Shown here one piece after another: positions 1 through 6,864 of a stretch of DNA of 64,000 nucleotides (within the stretch, counting starts at the first letter, position 1; each line of letters starts with the position of its first letter). The notes under the pieces were generated by a model. The model worked only from the letters and a program-made list of their open reading frames with translations. It was not told the DNA's origin and searched no databases. The position numbers were made by a program, and so were the translations under genes. This DNA is from Blastocystis sp. Blastoise (taxonomy: Eukaryota; Protista; Bigyra: Opalinata): the NCBI GenBank assembly GCA_039096225.1, contig JBBPEB010000015.1:2418001-2482000 (forward strand). Direction: 5' to 3'.

Positions 1-6
1 TCAAAT

Positions 7-455
7 GTGAAAAGAAGATTATCTAGATTAGCTTTAAAGCGTTGGTCTAATAATAAAACAATAAATCGATTTAATAGATTTGTAGAAGAGAGATTATATG
101 ATCATATTCGATGTTACCCTATAGAAGATTCAAATCATAATCCTACTATGACTCCTGAATTAATAGAATCATTTAATAAGAGTTGTGAATATGTATTTAA
201 TGAAATATATAGATGGATATCACAATGTGATAGAGGAAGAATAAATCATAATGATAGATATAATAATAATAATAGAGATGTAGGTAGTTCAGCTAATGAA
301 GATCGTAATTATCATAATGAAACTAGAAATAGAAATCATCATTTTCATGATAATAATAGATTTAATAATAATAATAATAATAGAAGATATATTAGAAGAT
401 ATAATAATAATAGAAATCAAAGAAGATATAATAATAATAATAGAAATACTAGAAG

Positions 456-490
<35 letters not shown>

Positions 491-2178
491 GAAATCATAA
501 TAATAATAATAATAATAATAATAGAAATACTAGAAATTTAAATACAAATAGAAATGAAAGAAGAATGAATAATGAAATGGAAATTGAAACTGAATCTGAG
601 AATACTAATAATACTAATACTAATTCTAATCAAATTAATTCTTCTAATTCTAATACTTCTAATAATGATACTCAATCAGAAAGAGAATCTAATATTAATA
701 ATTCTAATAATAATCGTTCTAATACTCATTCTAATAATAATTCTAATAATCGTTCTAATACTCATTCTAATAATAATTCTAATAATAATAATAGATATAA
801 TAGAAATAGAAATAATAATTATCATTCAAATAATAATAATAATAGATTTAATTATAATATAAATGATGAGAATGAATTGAATGAAGAATTAATAAATTCA
901 GAAATTCAATATTATAAGAAAGTATCTAAACTTCTTAATGAATGTATTCAATCTATTAATACATTTACTTCTCAAATATCTATGAATAATAATAATTCCA
1001 TTTCTATTCAATCTTCTATAAATATATTTATAGGTAAATTAGTAGAAATATATGAAATGAATACAGAAGAACCTATATTAGGTACTATATTAGAAAATCT
1101 AAATATATCAAATATTAATGAATCTATTAATATAATGAATATAGATTTATGGAATGATAGTAAGAATTCATTAAATCATTTTTATGATAATTCAAAAAGA
1201 ATGATTGAAGATTTATTAAAGAATAAAGAGAATATAAAGAATCATAGAGAAGCATCTAAAATAAGAAAAGATTTTGAAATTAATTCTAAATCTACTCTTC
1301 GTTCTCAAATATGGAATAATAATATTGGAGAACATTGTACTATTCCTCCTGATACTCTTACTCAATTATATTCTGATTTATATTCCTCTCATGAATCTAA
1401 TACTAATTCTACTTCTACTCCTCCTCCTTTATGGTTATCTTCTAATATTTCTACTATACCTGAAAATTCTTCTTCTTTCAATATTATTAAATTTAAAGAT
1501 GTTACTAGAATTCTAAGGAAACTTCCTAATAATAGTACTCCTGGTGCTAATGGAATTCCTTATGAAATCTATAAAAGAAGTACTTCTGCTAGATTATTAT
1601 TAACTTATATCTTAGAAGTATGTAGATATAATGAAATTACTTTAAATAGTTGGAATGAATCTATTACTTGGTTATTAGATAAAGGAAAAGATGATAAATC
1701 TTCTTTAAATAATTGGAGACCTTTATGTCTTCAAAATGTAGAATCAAAAATATTTTCTTCTCTTATAGTAGATTATATTAATAATATTAATAATTCTTAT
1801 CATATTATATCTTCTTATCAAAAAGGATTTACTCCTAGTGTAGCTGGTTGTGAAGATCTTAATTATATTCTTAGTAATATCATAGCTGATTTTAAATTAA
1901 AAAGACTAAGAAATTCTAATTTATTAATTAATTTCTTAGATTTAGAAAAAGCTTATGATACTGTTCCTCATAAGATATTATTAAATATTCTTCATATGAT
2001 GAATTTTCCTAATAATATTATTAATATAATAAAGAGTTGGTATGATAATGCTTCTACTAAAATTAGATATGATAATCATCAATATACTTCTTCTATTCAT
2101 CTTCATAGAGGTATTCGTCAAGGTGATCCTCTTTCTCCTCTATTATTTAATATTATTATAGATCCTCTTCTTAAATAT

Positions 2179-2209
<31 letters not shown>

Positions 2210-4178
2210 TGAAAGTACAAATAAAAGATAATGATACTATAATATTAGAATCAAATGCATATGCTTATGCTGATGATATAGTATTATTATCAAATTGTAC
2301 TAATGATAATAATATTTTATTAGAAAGAGTAGGTGAAGTATTAGATTATTATTCTATGAAATTGAGTGTTTCAAAATGTAAATGTATGGGAATGAAGATG
2401 AGTGATGATAGAAATAGAAAATTAGAATATACTATTACTCCTCCTATTTATAAGAATGAATCAATTCCTATAATGACTGAAGAAGAAACTGTAAGATATC
2501 TTGGTTGTCCTATTTCTTATATATATACAAAGAGAAGAGAATTTTGGGTAGATAATATAAAGAAAGTAAGTGAACGATTATCTTGTTTAAATAATAGTTT
2601 ATTAACTCCTTGTCAAAAAATTAATGTAGTAAAACAATATATCTTACCTTGTTTAGAATTCTTATTTAGAAATGGTGATATGAATAAGAATAATATTACT
2701 CTTATTGATACTACTATAAAACAATATATAATGAATTGGTTAGGAACTGGTACTAATCTACCTTCTCACTTCTTTAGTACTCCTATTAATAATGGTGGTT
2801 TAGGTATTATGCAATTAATTGATAGATATTATATAGGAAAGATATCTTTAATTGCGAGAATGGCTGTTTCTGATGATCCTCAAATTAGAAATATTCTTCA
2901 ATATACTATTAATAAATCTTCATTAACTAATGATTTATTTATGATACCTAATCCTATTGATTACTTAGATAATAATAATAATAATAATAATAATATTCCT
3001 GAAAATCATAAGAATGATTTATTATTCTTTCAATGGTTAATTAATGATAATCATAAAATAGTAAAAGGAAGAATAGAAAATGGTAATATAATAATACATG
3101 ATACTCCTTATGAATCATTAACAAATTTCTTTCCTTATCTTCGTAAAGCTGTAGATGCTGCTTATAAACTTGGTGTTAATATAGCTTATATAGATGCTAA
3201 TGATATATCTCTAGGTATTAAAATAAAATTAATAGATAAAGATATTCCTGAATTAAATACTACTATTCCTTATGAGAAAGTAAGAAGAACGATATGTAAA
3301 GAAATTAATAACTTATTGAAGAAGAAACATTCAAAACAATTATTAAATAATTATGAAAATACTTATTATTATAAATATTTAGATAATAACATAGAAAGTA
3401 ATAGATGGTTATTTAATGGTAAGAGATGTCATCCTATGAAATATTCTGCTTTAATTAATATAAGAATGAGAACAGCATTTACTGGTTCTCAATCTTTCTT
3501 ATATAATAAGAAGAGATCTCCTAAGATTAATGATACTGAAGCTCTTTGTCCTTATTGTTTAGAACATAATAAAAGAGCTATTCATAACTTGAATCATATT
3601 CTTACTACATGTGATAGAATCACAGATAATAATGGAATAGGTGGATTAATTACAAATAGACATAATCAAATATTAAATAATTTATATAAGAAATTAATAA
3701 GAAAATATAAATTAGGAGAATATAGAATAAGTATAGATAAATCATTATCAACTTCCTTTGGTAATGATATATTTAATAGAAATATGAATAATCTTCGTCC
3801 TGATATAGTAATTATTCCTACAAATCCAAATAACAAAGATATAATAATAGCAGATGTAGGTATAGCATATGAAGGATCTTCTAATCAAATAGATCCTCTT
3901 CAAACAATGAAACAGAAGAAAGATCATGATTATGATAATGTAATAGAAATATTGAATAATAATGGTTATAGAGTGAGTAATTATTCTTTAATCTTTGGTT
4001 CTTCTGGAGTTATTCCTAAAGATACTTTAAATAATCTTAGAAAGATATTAGATATTTCTAAGAAGAATGTATCTTACTATGCTTCTATATTAAATAATAT
4101 TATCCTAGATTGGTCATATAAATTCTGGTTAAAATCTCTTCCTGATAGTCATACTATCTCTACTCATTTAAGAGATTC

Positions 4179-4249
<71 letters not shown>

Positions 4250-4260
4250 TATCTCAATAA
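7..4260 (+). CDS. Retrotransposon protein: reverse transcriptase, CCHC zinc knuckle and restriction-like endonuclease (5'-partial; frame is open from base 1)
   Basis: RT motifs in order: PGANGIPYE, WRPLCLQN, QKGF, FLDLEKAYDTVPH, GIRQGDPLSPLLF, YADD, RYLG, GGLGI. Then CPYC...HILTTC, RHN, RPDIVI...IADVGI...KDHDY and IFGSSG. Confidence 0.96.
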
Positions 4261-4560
4261 TTTAAATTAATATATCATATTAATTTATCTTTTATTGATA
4301 TTTTATTCATTTACTTTCTTTTATTTTCAACTTCTTTCTACTATTCATTCTATATTATTTTAATACTTCATACTTCTATATATACTCAAAATCAATCATT
4401 TTCTTCTTATTTCTTCATTATATTCTTCTATTATCAATTCTATTCAAATATCTACGATTTATATGTAATTATCTTTATGTTAAATGAAGTCTTCAATTTT
4501 ACTAGATTTTATATATATACCTTACATATAGTATTAATTATTAATTTTATTCAAAATTTT

Positions 4561-5262
4561 ATGATTGTGTCCCAAAACACAATTAATAGTTGATATTATA
4601 TTTATATATATATAATCAATTGAAATTTTCAAATTTCGAACTCTAATGGAATCAGGAAATCGATTTATGTTTTGGAATATATATATACTTTTATATATAC
4701 ATTTTCATATAGACGTCCTCTCTAAAATCGATTTTTCATTACCTTCTAGATGGTCTTATAGGCTCTATTATACCTCAAACATCTTGTATTGAGCTATATT
4801 TGGTTTATTTATCATTCAAATTTTGATTCTGAAAATTTCATTTTTTATGATATTTTTCACTATTTCAAAATTTTGACTAAGTTACCCAAAAAATTAATTT
4901 CCTTATTTGTGTTCCAAAACACAATAAAATCCAACTAGGATATCTATCAACTACAAATAAGTTGTTTTCTTCGAATTTAGAATTCTAATAGAGTCAAGAG
5001 AACTAATTTAATGTTTTCACATTATCTCTCCTATTACTAAGTCAAGCCGAAATTAACTTAAAAATATCGAGTTTTCCAAAATTTTAAAATTTCATTAGAT
5101 ACTACTCCTTCCTCTTCATATTAATATATATTCCAATTTTCGTAAGTCTCTCTACTTTACTACTTATACATCATTTTATACTAAAAATTTCAATATACTT
5201 CTCATTATTATCGTTTTTTCTCAGTATTCAAAGCGCACATGATTGTGTTCCTTGGCAATAAT
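4561..5262 (+). repeat. Degenerate ~340-bp periodic repeat in the putative 3' UTR, each unit marked by a TTGTGT-loop-ACACAA hairpin
   Basis: Hairpin motif at 4564-4583, 4907-4924 and (degenerate) 5242-5259. A second shared block at 4631-4673 vs 4973-5017 has the same 342-bp offset. Confidence 0.6.
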
Positions 5263-5886
5263 ATTGTTCATTACTTCTACTACTACATTTCTTATTAAAT
5301 AAATATTCTCATATTTCTTATTTTTCATCTTCATTTTTATACTTTTATCAAAATCATGATTCTCATTTCTTATCATATACTCTATATTCTATTAACTGAT
5401 TCTCTCTTAAATATTTTTCATCCAACACTTATTTTTTCTCATATGATGAATTATTTCATCTCATTATTAAATCCATCTTTTTTATTCTATTTTGATCTCT
5501 CTTTCTCTCTATTATCACAAATTTATATAGTTCAATAAGGTTTTTATATATACATATATATATATATATATAGATTTCTCTCCTCTATATATATATATAT
5601 AAACCATATTTTATTTTTCTTTTATATATTTATTTTATAATTTTATTTCATTTAAAATAGGACATATTTTAATATAATATTAATTAATTTTAATAATAAA
5701 ATAAAAATATTTTTATAATATTTTTTTATATAATATATTACTATGCCTTATATTTATATATATATACATATATATAAATATAATATTATGACCTTTGTTT
5801 TATTAATAATATAAGATTTCTTTAATTTTATTATCATATATCTTATATTATCTAAAGATATATATATATATAGATATTTTATCATA

Positions 5887-6048
5887 TATATAGTTAGGAA
5901 CTATATAGATCAAAAACTCCTACCTATCCTGTCCTATAGGCAAAAAATTAAAAAACTAAAACTTTTTTTATAATTCTTGTTTTTGACGTCCCTCTTTGGA
6001 TGTCTTTTTTTCCATGCTGACATGGAGTTTTTGTTTAGTTTTTGATCT
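5887..6048 (+). other. Compact structured RNA element near the 3' end of the retrotransposon
   Basis: Helices 5887-5895/5899-5907, 5923-5927/5936-5940, 5985-5991/5998-6004 (one G-U) and 6011-6016/6021-6026, plus a 12-bp long-range pair 5907-5918/6037-6048. Confidence 0.55.
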
Positions 6049-6141
6049 TAAAATAAAGTTGACTTTCTCAATTTTATTATTATTTTATTTTTATTTGTGT
6101 TTCTCTGTTCCTTATCTTTCTTTTCTCTTGTTTAAATTAAT

Positions 6142-6164
6142 TGGTTCGATCCCGGGTCAAGGCG
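6142..6164 (+). tRNA. Orphan 3' fragment of a tRNA gene (T-arm/B-box, 3' acceptor strand, discriminator); isotype undetermined, Phe-like T-arm
   Basis: TGGTTCGATCCCGGGTCAAGGCG parses as GG-TTCGATC-CCGGG T-arm + TCAAGGC acceptor strand + N73. No D-arm, anticodon arm or complementary GCCTTGA strand upstream. Confidence 0.8.
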
Positions 6165-6165
6165 A

Positions 6166-6186
6166 TTTCTTTTTTCTTTTCTTTTA
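6166..6186 (+). terminator. Pol III-type oligo(T) terminator of the interrupted tRNA gene
   Basis: TTTCTTTTTTCTTTT starts 2 nt after the discriminator position. Confidence 0.55.
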
Positions 6187-6864
6187 TTATTCTTCTATTG
6201 CTTGTATCTAAAAGAAAATGCTTCTTTTTTGATGCTTTGGATTATGTATAATTATAAAACGTATTTATTATGCCTAATAGGAGAGTCTAATTGATTTGAT
6301 TTTTTTTTCGTGTTTTAAATAAAGTTATAGGGATGTTTAAACGTATATATATGCAGCATAAAATAACAAAGAAATGATAACACTCATTTTTAAAAATGAA
6401 ACACATTAGTTTTGCATCCGTTTTTTTATTAAAAGTTTTTAAAACACTATAAGAAAATGAGGGTGACATAGATGAGAATGAATAAGTAATATAATATAAA
6501 AGGCTTTCATTATTTTCGTATTATTACAAAAATGATTGATTTTGATAATATATAAGTCTATTTATAATATAATGTGTTCATACTCTGTTCAATGAATATA
6601 TTCATGTGACATAATAAAATGTATATGACAGATTCATTTTTTAAAATAAAAATGTAACTGTGAAAATTTCACATTCTAAAGAGCGACTCTTAGATATTTT
6701 AATTGAAACTAAAAAAACTAAAATAAAATAGATGATAATATAGAATTGGATTTTAAAAGATTTAAACAAATATAAGTAGAGATACGAATAAGAATTATTG
6801 ATTATATAGAAAAAGAAATATATTTTGTATATAATACTATTGCTCTCCTCTTCATATTCTACAA

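What the first reader, a model, noticed from the sequence alone, without database searches (positions are those of the whole stretch)
1..6186. Candidate tRNA-gene-specific RLE retrotransposon inserted in the T-arm of a tRNA
Seen: an intact RT-CCHC-RLE ORF and ~1.9 kb of non-coding tail, then an abrupt switch to TGGTTCGATCCCGGGTCAAGGCG plus oligo-T, which is the last ~23 nt of a tRNA gene with its 5' part missing. Known: RLE non-LTR elements usually cut fixed sites in multicopy RNA genes (R2 in 28S rDNA, NeSL in SL RNA, Utopia in U2 snRNA), and tRNA-internal targets are rare. Inference: this element targets a tRNA gene just 5' of the B-box, and the missing 5' half (predicted to start GCCTTGA) lies left of the element, outside the window. 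I know of no such family from this kind of protist. It would be a new site-specific TPRT integration system.
Basis: partly seen in the sequence, partly recalled or inferred. Interest (0 to 1): 0.92.

Follow-up and report, generated by a model that had tools for sequence, protein, structure and literature searches.

The report
tRNA-Phe-specific R2-like retrotransposon, tRNA kept intact
The window holds the last 6.1 kb of a 10-kb R2/NeSL-type retrotransposon of a tortoise-gut Blastocystis that inserts only into tRNA-Phe genes, yet leaves a complete tRNA gene upstream by duplicating the tRNA's last 23 bases.

Summary

- **What the window holds.** Window 1-6141 is the 3' 61% of a ~10.07-kb non-LTR element (family A). 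It has one 2,717-codon ORF with RT, CCHC and an R2-type restriction-like endonuclease (RLE), then a 1.88-kb 3' UTR. The genome is Blastocystis sp. 'Blastoise' (33.3 Mb).
- **The tRNA is not split.** The array starts behind a complete tRNA-Phe(GAA) gene. Each copy begins at the first base after the tRNA and ends at a duplicate of tRNA positions 51-73 (window 6142-6164).
- **Site specificity.** All eight family A 3' ends abut this fragment, and every 5' end found follows a tRNA end. All 7 tRNA-Phe genes are intact and 6 are occupied, often by head-to-tail arrays.
- **A second family.** Family B (43% identical protein) does the same at tRNA-Lys(UUU), occupying 5 of 6 genes with a 24-nt duplicate.
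- **Relatives elsewhere.** Metagenome relatives at 23-29% identity follow tRNA-Val, tRNA-Ile and other tRNA 3' ends, with 14-16-nt duplicates.
- **Most likely mechanism (inferred).** Target-primed reverse transcription starts from a nick in the T-arm, with the 5' junction at the tRNA's 3' end.

tRNA-specific NeSL-type elements are already published, so this is a new variant, not a new kind. Other first-stage notes flagged both families elsewhere in this genome.

The parts
1..4260 (+). Codons 1299-2717 plus the stop of the element's single 2,717-codon ORF. The ATG lies outside the window at G000:C4:2414107, which is 32 nt after a tRNA-Phe 3' end.
1696..2514 (+). Reverse transcriptase domain, with YADD at 2260-2277.
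   Evidence: Pfam RVT_1 at E 6.3e-33. The best solved relatives are R2 proteins (9nl2 at E 2.6e-37), ahead of LINE-1 ORF2 at ~1e-26.
3547..3612 (+). CCHC zinc knuckle (C-x2-C-x12-H-x4-C) of the linker that precedes the endonuclease.
   Evidence: The four Zn ligands are invariant or nearly invariant among 12 relatives.
3655..3933 (+). Catalytic core of the restriction-like endonuclease (PD-(D/E)XK type), with motifs RHN, RPD, D-V..Y-E and K.
   Evidence: P166, D167 and K206 are invariant in alignment A1. The model has pLDDT 83.6. Foldseek's top 7 hits are all R2 proteins.
4261..6141 (+). 3' untranslated region of 1.88 kb, 20% GC, with no poly(A) tail. It ends ...TTTAAATTAAT(T).
   Evidence: The last 262 nt are 98-100% identical in all 8 copies that have a 3' end.
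6142..6164 (+). Duplicate of tRNA-Phe(GAA) positions 51-73: part of the T-stem, the T-loop/B box, the acceptor 3' strand and the discriminator. This is the right-hand copy of the 23-nt direct repeat that flanks every element copy.
6165..6186 (+). Native tRNA-Phe trailer with its oligo-T Pol III terminator (ATTTCTTTTTT...). This is host DNA and marks the right end of the two-copy array.
   Evidence: The trailer starts the same way at the unoccupied tRNA-Phe gene (L015) and at the end of another array (L002).

Best explanation
This is a site-specific, R2/NeSL-type non-LTR retrotransposon (family A) of Blastocystis sp. 'Blastoise'. It uses the tRNA-Phe(GAA) gene as its only landing site.

**Shown**
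- The element is ~10.07 kb. It has a 32-nt leader, one 2,717-codon ORF (a long low-complexity N-terminal half, then RT, CCHC linker and RLE) and a 1.88-kb 3' UTR. It has no LTRs or terminal inverted repeats.
- Every copy starts at the first nucleotide after tRNA position 73. Every copy ends against a copy of tRNA positions 51-73.
- The result is always: intact tRNA, element, 23-nt tRNA end, then either the next element or the native trailer.
- The element's first bases supply T-runs where the tRNA gene's own terminator used to be.

**Inferred**
- The protein recognises the tRNA gene as DNA. Its RLE nicks the antisense strand in the T-stem, between positions 50/51 or 51/52. The freed 3'-OH primes reverse transcription of the element RNA from its 3' end (TPRT).
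- The sense strand is opened about 23 nt downstream, at the 73/74 boundary. Filling in this stagger duplicates the tRNA's 3' end and rebuilds a complete, terminated, presumably functional tRNA gene upstream.
- Because a complete target is regenerated, further copies can land at the same locus. This builds head-to-tail arrays.
For: **Protein**
- RVT_1 domain.
- R2 proteins are the best solved relatives.
- The C-terminal model superposes on the R2 linker/RLE.
- The CCHC, RHN, PD, (D/E) and K motifs are conserved in 12 relatives.
- Pfam finds nothing but RVT_1, so there is no APE, integrase or tyrosine-recombinase domain.
- The unit has no terminal repeats.

**Specificity**
- 8 of 8 3' ends abut the fragment.
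- Every 5' end found follows a tRNA or fragment end directly.
- All 7 tRNA-Phe gene bodies are intact: 6 occupied and 1 empty with its native trailer.

**Independent insertions**
- The six occupied loci have different upstream flanks.
- The four-copy array on contig 15 alternates two 5' subtypes: A1, A2, A1, A2.

**Independent replicates of the same geometry**
- Family B sits at tRNA-Lys(UUU) with a 24-nt duplicate. 5 of 6 genes are occupied, and an empty gene (L025) has the same downstream flank as the end of the contig-10 array (L026).
- A tRNA-Val(GAC) element has a 16-nt duplicate (L046).
- A tRNA-Ile(GAU) element has a 14-nt duplicate (L047, L048).
- Three elements follow another tRNA 3' end (L042-L044), and one shows a 14-nt fragment between tandem copies (L045).

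**Control**
- 0 of 40 generic non-LTR metagenome loci have a co-oriented tRNA upstream.
Against: - Nothing here shows the nicks, the RNA or an actual transposition event. No RNA run could be listed.
- Sequence alone cannot tell which 23-nt copy is old and which is new.
- It also cannot tell whether the left copy comes from a staggered cut or from cDNA of a tRNA-element co-transcript.
- R2 itself cuts the two strands about 2 bp apart (from my own knowledge). A 14-24-nt stagger whose left edge is fixed at the tRNA end in five lineages, while the right edge drifts, looks odd for a pure DNA-cleavage rule.
- The N-terminal half has no recognisable DNA-binding domain.
- For family B the duplicate could be 24-35 nt, because the element's first 11 nt equal the native trailer.
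Confidence: 0.8

Rival explanations
1. The element and the T-arm first nick are the same, but the left junction is made at the RNA level rather than by a staggered second nick. The template would be a transcript that still carries tRNA sequence at its 5' end (a tRNA-element co-transcript). Alternatively its 5' end would be cut by the tRNA 3'-processing enzyme RNase Z exactly after position 73. The end of the cDNA would then pair with, or be joined to, the upstream tRNA sequence of the target. An intact tRNA followed by the element is thereby copied from the donor locus each time.
For: - The element's left boundary coincides with the tRNA 3'-processing site in every lineage seen (Phe, Lys, Val, Ile), while the right-hand junction drifts from position 49/50 to 59/60.
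- The leaders are only 16-50 nt in four of these lineages, which leaves no room for an upstream promoter inside the element.
- No self-cleaving ribozyme of the kind R2 uses was detected.
- Family B's leader begins with 11 nt identical to native tRNA-Lys trailers.
Against: - There are no RNA data at all.
- T-runs directly after the tRNA would stop Pol III, so a Pol II read-through transcript has to be assumed.
- An internal initiator-type promoter firing at +1 would explain the short leaders equally well.
- In family A the junction is exact at 73/74, although the native trailer and the element start differ. This fits a fixed cut just as well.
Confidence: 0.2
2. The 23-nt tRNA end belongs to the element as its own 3' tail. 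Insertion would then occur exactly between tRNA position 73 and the trailer, with no target-site duplication.
For: - The final structure is indistinguishable by sequence.
- In L047 the upstream tRNA-Ile and the downstream fragment differ at one base. That is expected if the fragment travels with the element.
Against: - A tail that is sense to the tRNA could pair only with the antisense strand on the wrong side of a nick at 73/74, so it would not help priming.
- The L047/L048 difference is a single base, probably at one locus seen in two samples.
- In R2-type elements, downstream target sequence in read-through RNA normally guides priming and is not copied. This point is from my own knowledge, not a test here.
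Confidence: 0.08
3. There is no ongoing site specificity. One old insertion beside a tRNA gene would have been spread by segmental duplication and unequal crossing-over of a tRNA-plus-element block.
For: - Arrays have regular 10.0-10.6-kb periods.
- Some tRNA-Lys loci share downstream flanks.
Against: - Six tRNA-Phe loci on three contigs have different upstream flanks.
- Array neighbours alternate between subtypes and differ by 3-5%.
- A second family 43% identical in protein sits at a different tRNA with the same geometry.
- Distant relatives sit at further tRNAs.
Confidence: 0.02
4. Integration is by a site-specific recombinase through an att-like core in the tRNA 3' end, as in bacterial tRNA-targeting islands or DIRS-type retroelements.
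For: The layout looks the same as for prokaryotic integrative elements in tRNA genes: an intact tRNA on one side and a short tRNA 3' duplicate on the other (resemblance only).
Against: - Pfam finds nothing but RVT_1, so no integrase or tyrosine-recombinase domain.
- The C-terminal domain folds as the R2 RLE.
- There are no terminal repeats.
- The duplicate length varies from 14 to 24 nt between relatives.
Confidence: 0.02

Closest known systems
tRNA-gene-specific NeSL-group elements: NeSL-1_TV (tRNA-Pro, Trichomonas), LIN15_SM (tRNA-Arg) and LIN25_SM (tRNA-Glu) of planarians (Kojima & Jurka 2015, PMC4640811)
   Same: These are RLE-bearing non-LTR elements that insert at a fixed place inside a tRNA gene in the tRNA's orientation. 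LIN15_SM also shows overlapping 5' and 3' tRNA flanks, meaning a long duplication.
   Different: In LIN15_SM the 3' junction is in the anticodon stem and the 5' junction is inside the T-arm, so neither copy is a whole tRNA. Here the 5' junction is at the tRNA's last base and the gene stays whole. The host (a stramenopile), the targets (Phe, Lys) and the 2,500-2,700-codon ORFs also differ. I could not compare sequences because no Repbase references were available.
NeSL-1-like elements of Caenorhabditis
   Same: The nearest named proteins in the profile search are Caenorhabditis proteins (P0241, P0221). They are collinear with family A from RT through CCHC and RLE: 22% identity over 955 columns, E 8e-45.
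   Different: They fall in the sister clade of the tree. That these proteins are NeSL-1, and that NeSL-1 targets the spliced-leader gene, is from my own knowledge and was not tested here.
R2 (28S rDNA-specific)
   Same: Both have a single ORF with RT, CCHC linker and C-terminal RLE, no poly(A) tail, and a fixed site in a multicopy RNA gene. R2 is also the best solved structural match.
   Different: R2 targets 28S rDNA and inactivates the unit it enters. Its two nicks are about 2 bp apart, and it has N-terminal zinc-finger/Myb domains and a 5' HDV-like ribozyme (all from my own knowledge). Pfam found no zinc-finger or Myb domain in the family A N-terminal half, and Rfam found no ribozyme.
R9 of bdelloid rotifers
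   Same: It is an R2-lineage element that makes an unusually long target-site duplication (Gladyshev & Arkhipova 2009, cited in PMC5035012).
   Different: It targets 28S rDNA and its duplication is 126 bp (the figure is from my own knowledge). The duplication does not serve to rebuild a small gene.
Dictyostelium TRE5/TRE3
   Same: They are non-LTR elements that use tRNA genes as landmarks in a compact protist genome and spare the gene (PMC5391098).
   Different: From my own knowledge, they are APE-type elements that insert some tens of bp upstream or downstream of any tRNA gene through Pol III factors. They are not sequence-specific, do not enter the gene and leave no tRNA duplicate.
Bacterial integrative elements and phages in tRNA genes; Dada DNA transposons (PMC8869645)
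   Same: They land in tRNA genes. The prokaryotic elements restore the tRNA with a carried 3' duplicate.
   Different: Their enzymes are unrelated (tyrosine integrases, transposases). This is an analogy of outcome only.

Membership tests
RLE-bearing non-LTR retrotransposons (R2/NeSL/CRE type) | Reverse transcriptase of the non-LTR type | tested here: met
   RVT_1 at E 6e-33. R2 and LINE-1 ORF2 are the best solved relatives.
RLE-bearing non-LTR retrotransposons (R2/NeSL/CRE type) | CCHC motif and a PD-(D/E)XK restriction-like endonuclease C-terminal to the RT; no APE domain | tested here: met
   Conserved motifs. The fold matches the R2 RLE at E 1e-9. No PF03372 hit.
RLE-bearing non-LTR retrotransposons (R2/NeSL/CRE type) | No LTRs or terminal inverted repeats; single ORF | tested here: met
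   Self-comparison of the unit. One 2,717-codon ORF.
RLE-bearing non-LTR retrotransposons (R2/NeSL/CRE type) | Insertion at one fixed sequence of a multicopy gene | tested here: met
   8 of 8 3' ends and every 5' end found lie at tRNA-Phe positions 51/52 and 73/74.
RLE-bearing non-LTR retrotransposons (R2/NeSL/CRE type) | Integration by target-primed reverse transcription | not testable with these tools
   This needs nicking/TPRT assays or junction-capture experiments.
R2 clade in the strict sense | 28S rDNA target site | tested here: not met
   The target is tRNA-Phe.
R2 clade in the strict sense | N-terminal zinc-finger/Myb DNA-binding domains | tested here: inconclusive
   No Pfam hit in the 1,298 N-terminal residues. 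The one block shared with family B could not be folded (pLDDT 43) or matched.
R2 clade in the strict sense | 5' HDV-like self-cleaving ribozyme | tested here: not met
   An Rfam scan at E<=1 of full family A and B units and three relatives found only tRNA. A divergent ribozyme could be missed.
NeSL group (NeSL, Utopia, LIN and kin) | RT phylogeny placing it with reference NeSL-group sequences | tested here: inconclusive
   In a FastTree of 113 RT-to-RLE sequences, the tRNA-linked elements form a clade next to one that contains Caenorhabditis proteins. R2-like outgroups are more distant. No named Repbase references were available.
Utopia | U2 snRNA gene target | tested here: not met
   The flanks are tRNA-Phe.
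Dictyostelium TRE-type tRNA-associated elements | APE endonuclease; insertion at a distance from any tRNA gene | tested here: not met
   The endonuclease is an RLE, not an APE. The junctions lie inside and at the end of one specific tRNA.
DIRS / integrase-type site-specific elements | Tyrosine recombinase or integrase, with terminal repeats | tested here: not met

The most novel reading that the evidence does not exclude
A large, so far unnamed clade of NeSL-like retrotransposons has made the 3' end of tRNA genes its niche. Members enter the T-arm, rebuild the tRNA by a 14-24-nt duplication and bring a new Pol III terminator. They would also use the tRNA itself as the 5' processing signal of their mRNA, with RNase Z cutting a tRNA-element co-transcript at position 73. 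The tRNA would then play the role that the HDV-like ribozyme plays for R2. That would be a retrotransposon whose integration site, host-sparing device and RNA maturation signal are one and the same host gene.
Probability: 0.22. Interest if true: 0.82.

Novelty: new variant of a known kind. Interest (0 to 1): 0.6.

Why it matters
- **A different way to use a safe site.** Site-specific RLE retrotransposons are the model for TPRT and are being developed as tools for inserting genes. Almost all studied ones (R2) destroy the gene unit they enter. Here the element lands inside a tRNA gene and still leaves a complete, terminated gene. That may explain how two families can occupy 6 of 7 tRNA-Phe genes and 5 of 6 tRNA-Lys(UUU) genes.
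- **A natural series of related enzymes.** Related proteins have different short DNA targets (Phe, Lys, Val, Ile and others). This is useful for asking how RLE elements read and switch targets.
- **A testable question.** It can now be asked whether tRNA processing defines the element RNA.
- **Annotation.** For Blastocystis genomics it names roughly 10-kb repeat arrays that are currently annotated as hypothetical proteins.

Tried and rejected
- **RNA evidence.** The look-up of sequencing runs failed once, then listed no RNA run. Read laying was therefore not used, and nothing can be said about expression, transcript ends or co-transcription.
- **Ribozyme search.** Rfam at E<=1 on full units of families A and B and three relatives found only tRNA.
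- **N-terminal half.**
  - Pfam gives only a sub-threshold low-complexity hit.
  - The single block conserved between A and B (A residues ~958-1047) has no Pfam hit and no Atlas neighbour.
  - It folded at pLDDT 43, too poor to search. It remains unassigned.
- **Metagenome scan.** The scan with the RT-RLE alignment used the generic RT motif and returned ordinary non-LTR elements. It served only as a negative control for tRNA adjacency.
- **Context look-ups that gave nothing.**
  - P0121 and P0122 are from the window's own genome and are withheld.
  - P0241 is not on record.
  - P0003 and P0189 came without DNA.
  - L129, from the sister clade, starts with a possible tRNA 3' end, but it is too short to call.
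- **Hosts of relatives.** Cluster look-ups gave no organism names for members of the tRNA-linked clade. All come from Logan or ENA assemblies.
- **3' UTRs.** Families A and B share no alignable sequence beyond low complexity.
- **Phylogeny.** A tree against named Repbase clades (R2, R4, NeSL, Utopia, CRE, HERO) could not be built because no reference sequences were at hand.
- **Rejected readings.** I rejected an interrupted or split tRNA, recombinase-mediated integration, and spread by segmental duplication alone.

Full report
**1. What is in the window**

Window bases 1-4257 are one open frame that is already open at base 1. Pfam finds a reverse transcriptase (RVT_1, E 6e-33). Downstream lie a CCHC motif (3547-3612) and the motifs RHN, RPD, D-V..Y-E and K (3655-3933).

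- An AlphaFold model of the last 301 residues, built on 12 relatives, has pLDDT 83.6.
- Its seven best Foldseek matches in the PDB are all R2 retrotransposon proteins (E 1e-9 to 2e-6, TM 0.55-0.65). Viral and restriction PD-(D/E)XK nucleases follow.
- By sequence, R2 proteins are also the best solved relatives (E 2.6e-37), ahead of LINE-1 ORF2.

After the stop come 1.88 kb of AT-rich non-coding sequence. At 6142/6143-6164 sit the last 22-23 nt of a tRNA, and then an oligo-T trailer follows. ARAGORN finds no complete tRNA in the window.

**2. The genome and the whole element**

The window is G000:C4:2418001-2482000 of a 33.3-Mb, 34-contig assembly. A second family's protein (P0121) is named by NCBI 'Blastocystis sp. 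Blastoise' and occurs at 100% identity in G000. The size and GC content fit strain Rus-B from a Russian tortoise (PMC10690189). That paper never uses the words retro- or tRNA.

The DNA to the left of the window shows the following order:

- A complete tRNA-Phe(GAA) gene at C4:2403495-2403567.
- Copy 1 of the element, 10,485 bp, with a frameshift.
- The 22-nt tRNA fragment.
- Copy 2, 10,068 bp, whose 3' part is the window.
- The fragment again, then the native trailer.

Copy 2 carries one ORF of 2,717 codons. Its ATG lies 32 nt after the fragment, and the window holds codons 1299-2717. The N-terminal half is mostly low-complexity. The unit has no LTRs or inverted repeats.

**3. Site specificity**

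- The 22-mer occurs 15 times in the genome and never in the reversed control.
- Seven occurrences are the ends of complete tRNA-Phe genes and eight follow an element 3' end.
- A search for the tRNA body with up to 3 mismatches finds exactly those seven genes and no orphan 5' half.
- The last 262 nt of the element occur eight times, each ending against the fragment.
- Each of the ten matches to the first 326 nt starts at the base after a tRNA or fragment end. Two further copies with a variant 5' end (L008, L010) start the same way.
- Six of the seven tRNA-Phe genes are occupied. The seventh (C25:44626) carries the trailer ATTTCTTTTT, which is also seen after the last copy of two arrays.
- The occupied loci have different upstream flanks. 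The four-copy array on contig 15 alternates two 5' subtypes. Neighbouring copies on contig 4 are about 96-97% identical. The arrays therefore grew by repeated insertion, not by simple unequal exchange.

**4. Geometry**

- Counted on the 73-nt tRNA, the duplicate covers positions 51 (or 52) to 73.
- The element's 3' junction therefore lies in the 5' strand of the T-stem, just before the B box.
- The 5' junction lies at 73/74, the tRNA's 3' processing site.
- The element then begins with T4 and T5 runs. The upstream gene thus keeps its A box, B box and a terminator.

**5. Independent replicates**

*Family B.*
- It uses tRNA-Lys(UUU). Its protein is P0121/P0122, 2,536-2,568 residues.
- It is 43% identical to family A over the C-terminal 1,050 residues, with one further conserved block of about 170 residues (34% identical) in the N-terminal half.
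- Its tandem period is 8,591 bp and it leaves a 24-nt duplicate of positions 50-73. The ATG lies 29 nt after the tRNA.
- All six tRNA-Lys genes are intact and five are occupied.
- The empty gene on contig 1 has the same downstream flank as the distal end of the contig-10 array.

*Relatives outside the genome.* These have 23-29% identity and come from Logan and ENA assemblies of unnamed organisms.
- Three contigs begin with another tRNA 3' end about 80 nt before the ATG (L042-L044).
- One has tRNA-Val(GAC) 16 nt before the ATG. A 16-nt duplicate at the element's end is followed by the next copy's leader (L046).
- One has tRNA-Ile(GAU) 50 nt before the ATG and a 14-nt duplicate, again followed by a next copy (L047, L048).
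- One shows the end of a preceding copy, a 14-nt tRNA-like 3' end, a T-run, and then its own ORF (L045).
- In every case an oligo-T run follows the tRNA end directly.
- As a control, 40 ordinary non-LTR loci from metagenomes had no co-oriented upstream tRNA.

**6. Size and placement of the clade**

- A profile of the RT-to-RLE region finds at least 150 cluster representatives with E below 1e-114 among 1.84 billion proteins. Most match collinearly over nearly the whole profile, and many have 800-1,700 residues in front of the RT.
- In a FastTree of 113 such sequences, A and B are sisters and group with the L042-L044 elements (support 99).
- The Val, Ile and L045 elements lie in the neighbouring 42-member clade.
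- A 55-member sister clade contains Caenorhabditis and Filamoeba proteins.
- Family A is collinear with the C. japonica protein through CCHC and RLE (E 8e-45).
- I take those nematode proteins to be NeSL-1-like. That rests on my own knowledge and was not tested.

**7. Mechanism**

*Shown.* The domain set of an R2/NeSL-type element, strict site specificity, a 23-nt direct repeat, an intact upstream tRNA, and tandem stacking.

*Inferred.*
- The antisense strand is nicked in the T-stem and primes cDNA synthesis (TPRT).
- The sense strand is opened at 73/74, and repair duplicates the interval.
- Precedent for long duplications exists in R9 (cited in PMC5035012) and, implicitly, in planarian LIN15_SM. 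There the 5' and 3' tRNA-Arg flanks overlap but neither copy is complete.

*Main open point: how the left junction is made.* The left edge is fixed at the tRNA end in all lineages, while the right edge moves between positions 49/50 and 59/60. The leaders are very short and no ribozyme was found. I therefore give about 20% to an RNA-level origin. That would be either a tRNA-element co-transcript whose cDNA pairs with the target, or RNase Z defining the RNA's 5' end. No RNA run was listed, so this could not be tested.

**8. What is known and what is new**

- tRNA-gene-specific RLE elements are published as a side result: NeSL-1_TV, LIN15_SM and LIN25_SM (PMC4640811).
- Searches of the paper library found no such element in Blastocystis and no description of the gene-preserving geometry.
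- I rate it a new variant of a known kind. It has a new host lineage, new targets and giant ORFs, its insertion rebuilds the target gene, and it nearly saturates the target genes.

**9. Earlier notes and compliance**

- Other first-stage notes on other pieces of this genome describe the same two families. They agree with what I had already found and added nothing new.
- Copies are only described, and none is proposed for revival.

Noticed in passing
G000:C13:619037-636242 (L020-L022, L029-L031); also arrays on C10, C14, C29, C33: A second R2/NeSL-like family (B; NCBI 'hypothetical proteins' of 2,536-2,568 aa) sits in tandem behind tRNA-Lys(UUU) with an 8,591-bp period and a 24-nt tRNA duplicate. 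Its copies are 98-100% identical in protein, much closer to each other than family A copies are.
   Followed up: yes
L019:~170-185, about 65 nt after the tRNA end (codons ~12-16); the same place in family B (L029, L034, L036, L031): A small hairpin, GGAGU-(C/U)(A/C)AA-ACUC(C/U), is conserved at the nucleotide level in subtypes A1 and A2 and in both B subtypes. The surrounding N-terminal sequence is otherwise not alignable between the families. It could be an RNA signal at the element's 5' end, or a short conserved peptide.
   Followed up: partly
P0123, P0124, P0125 (N-termini; loci L042-L044): These relatives carry a motif like the Cys box of ubiquitin-specific proteases (..GNTC(Y/F)(V/M)N..) near the N-terminus. 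Pfam did not report a UCH/USP domain at E<=0.1, so this is only a motif-level hint.
   Followed up: partly
L013:1643 onward (G000:C23:~80162): A family A copy is cut off after 120 bp by another repeat that starts CAGTGTTTTGCAA and holds many TTTGCAAAATACTTTGG units. It is probably a nested DNA transposon. Such nesting may explain the 31-84-kb gaps between some family A 5' and 3' ends on contigs 4 and 23.
   Followed up: no
L007:1523-2925 (G000:C15:492971 onward): The copy after the first contig-15 element is only about 75% identical to family A over 1.4 kb. It is an older or third subfamily at the same site.
   Followed up: no
L047:18-90 versus L047:~6312; L048: In L047 the upstream tRNA-Ile has A at position 68. 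The duplicated fragment, and the tRNA in L048, have G there. This may be one locus seen in two samples, and a single base is too little to decide which repeat copy is element-borne.
   Followed up: partly
L045:~430-455; L046:~6365-6385; L048:~6255-6276: The Val, Ile and L045 elements all have GAATAAACA, which is like a polyadenylation signal, 2-13 nt before the tRNA fragment. Families A and B lack it and instead end in pyrimidine-rich stretches with TTTGTGT...TCTCTG.
   Followed up: no
All seven tRNA-Phe genes, e.g. L015:1450-1522: The acceptor stem has a C5-A68 mismatch (GCCTCGA paired with TCAAGGC) and the discriminator is G. Both features are present in the empty gene too, so this is the species' normal tRNA-Phe and not damage from insertion.
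   Followed up: partly
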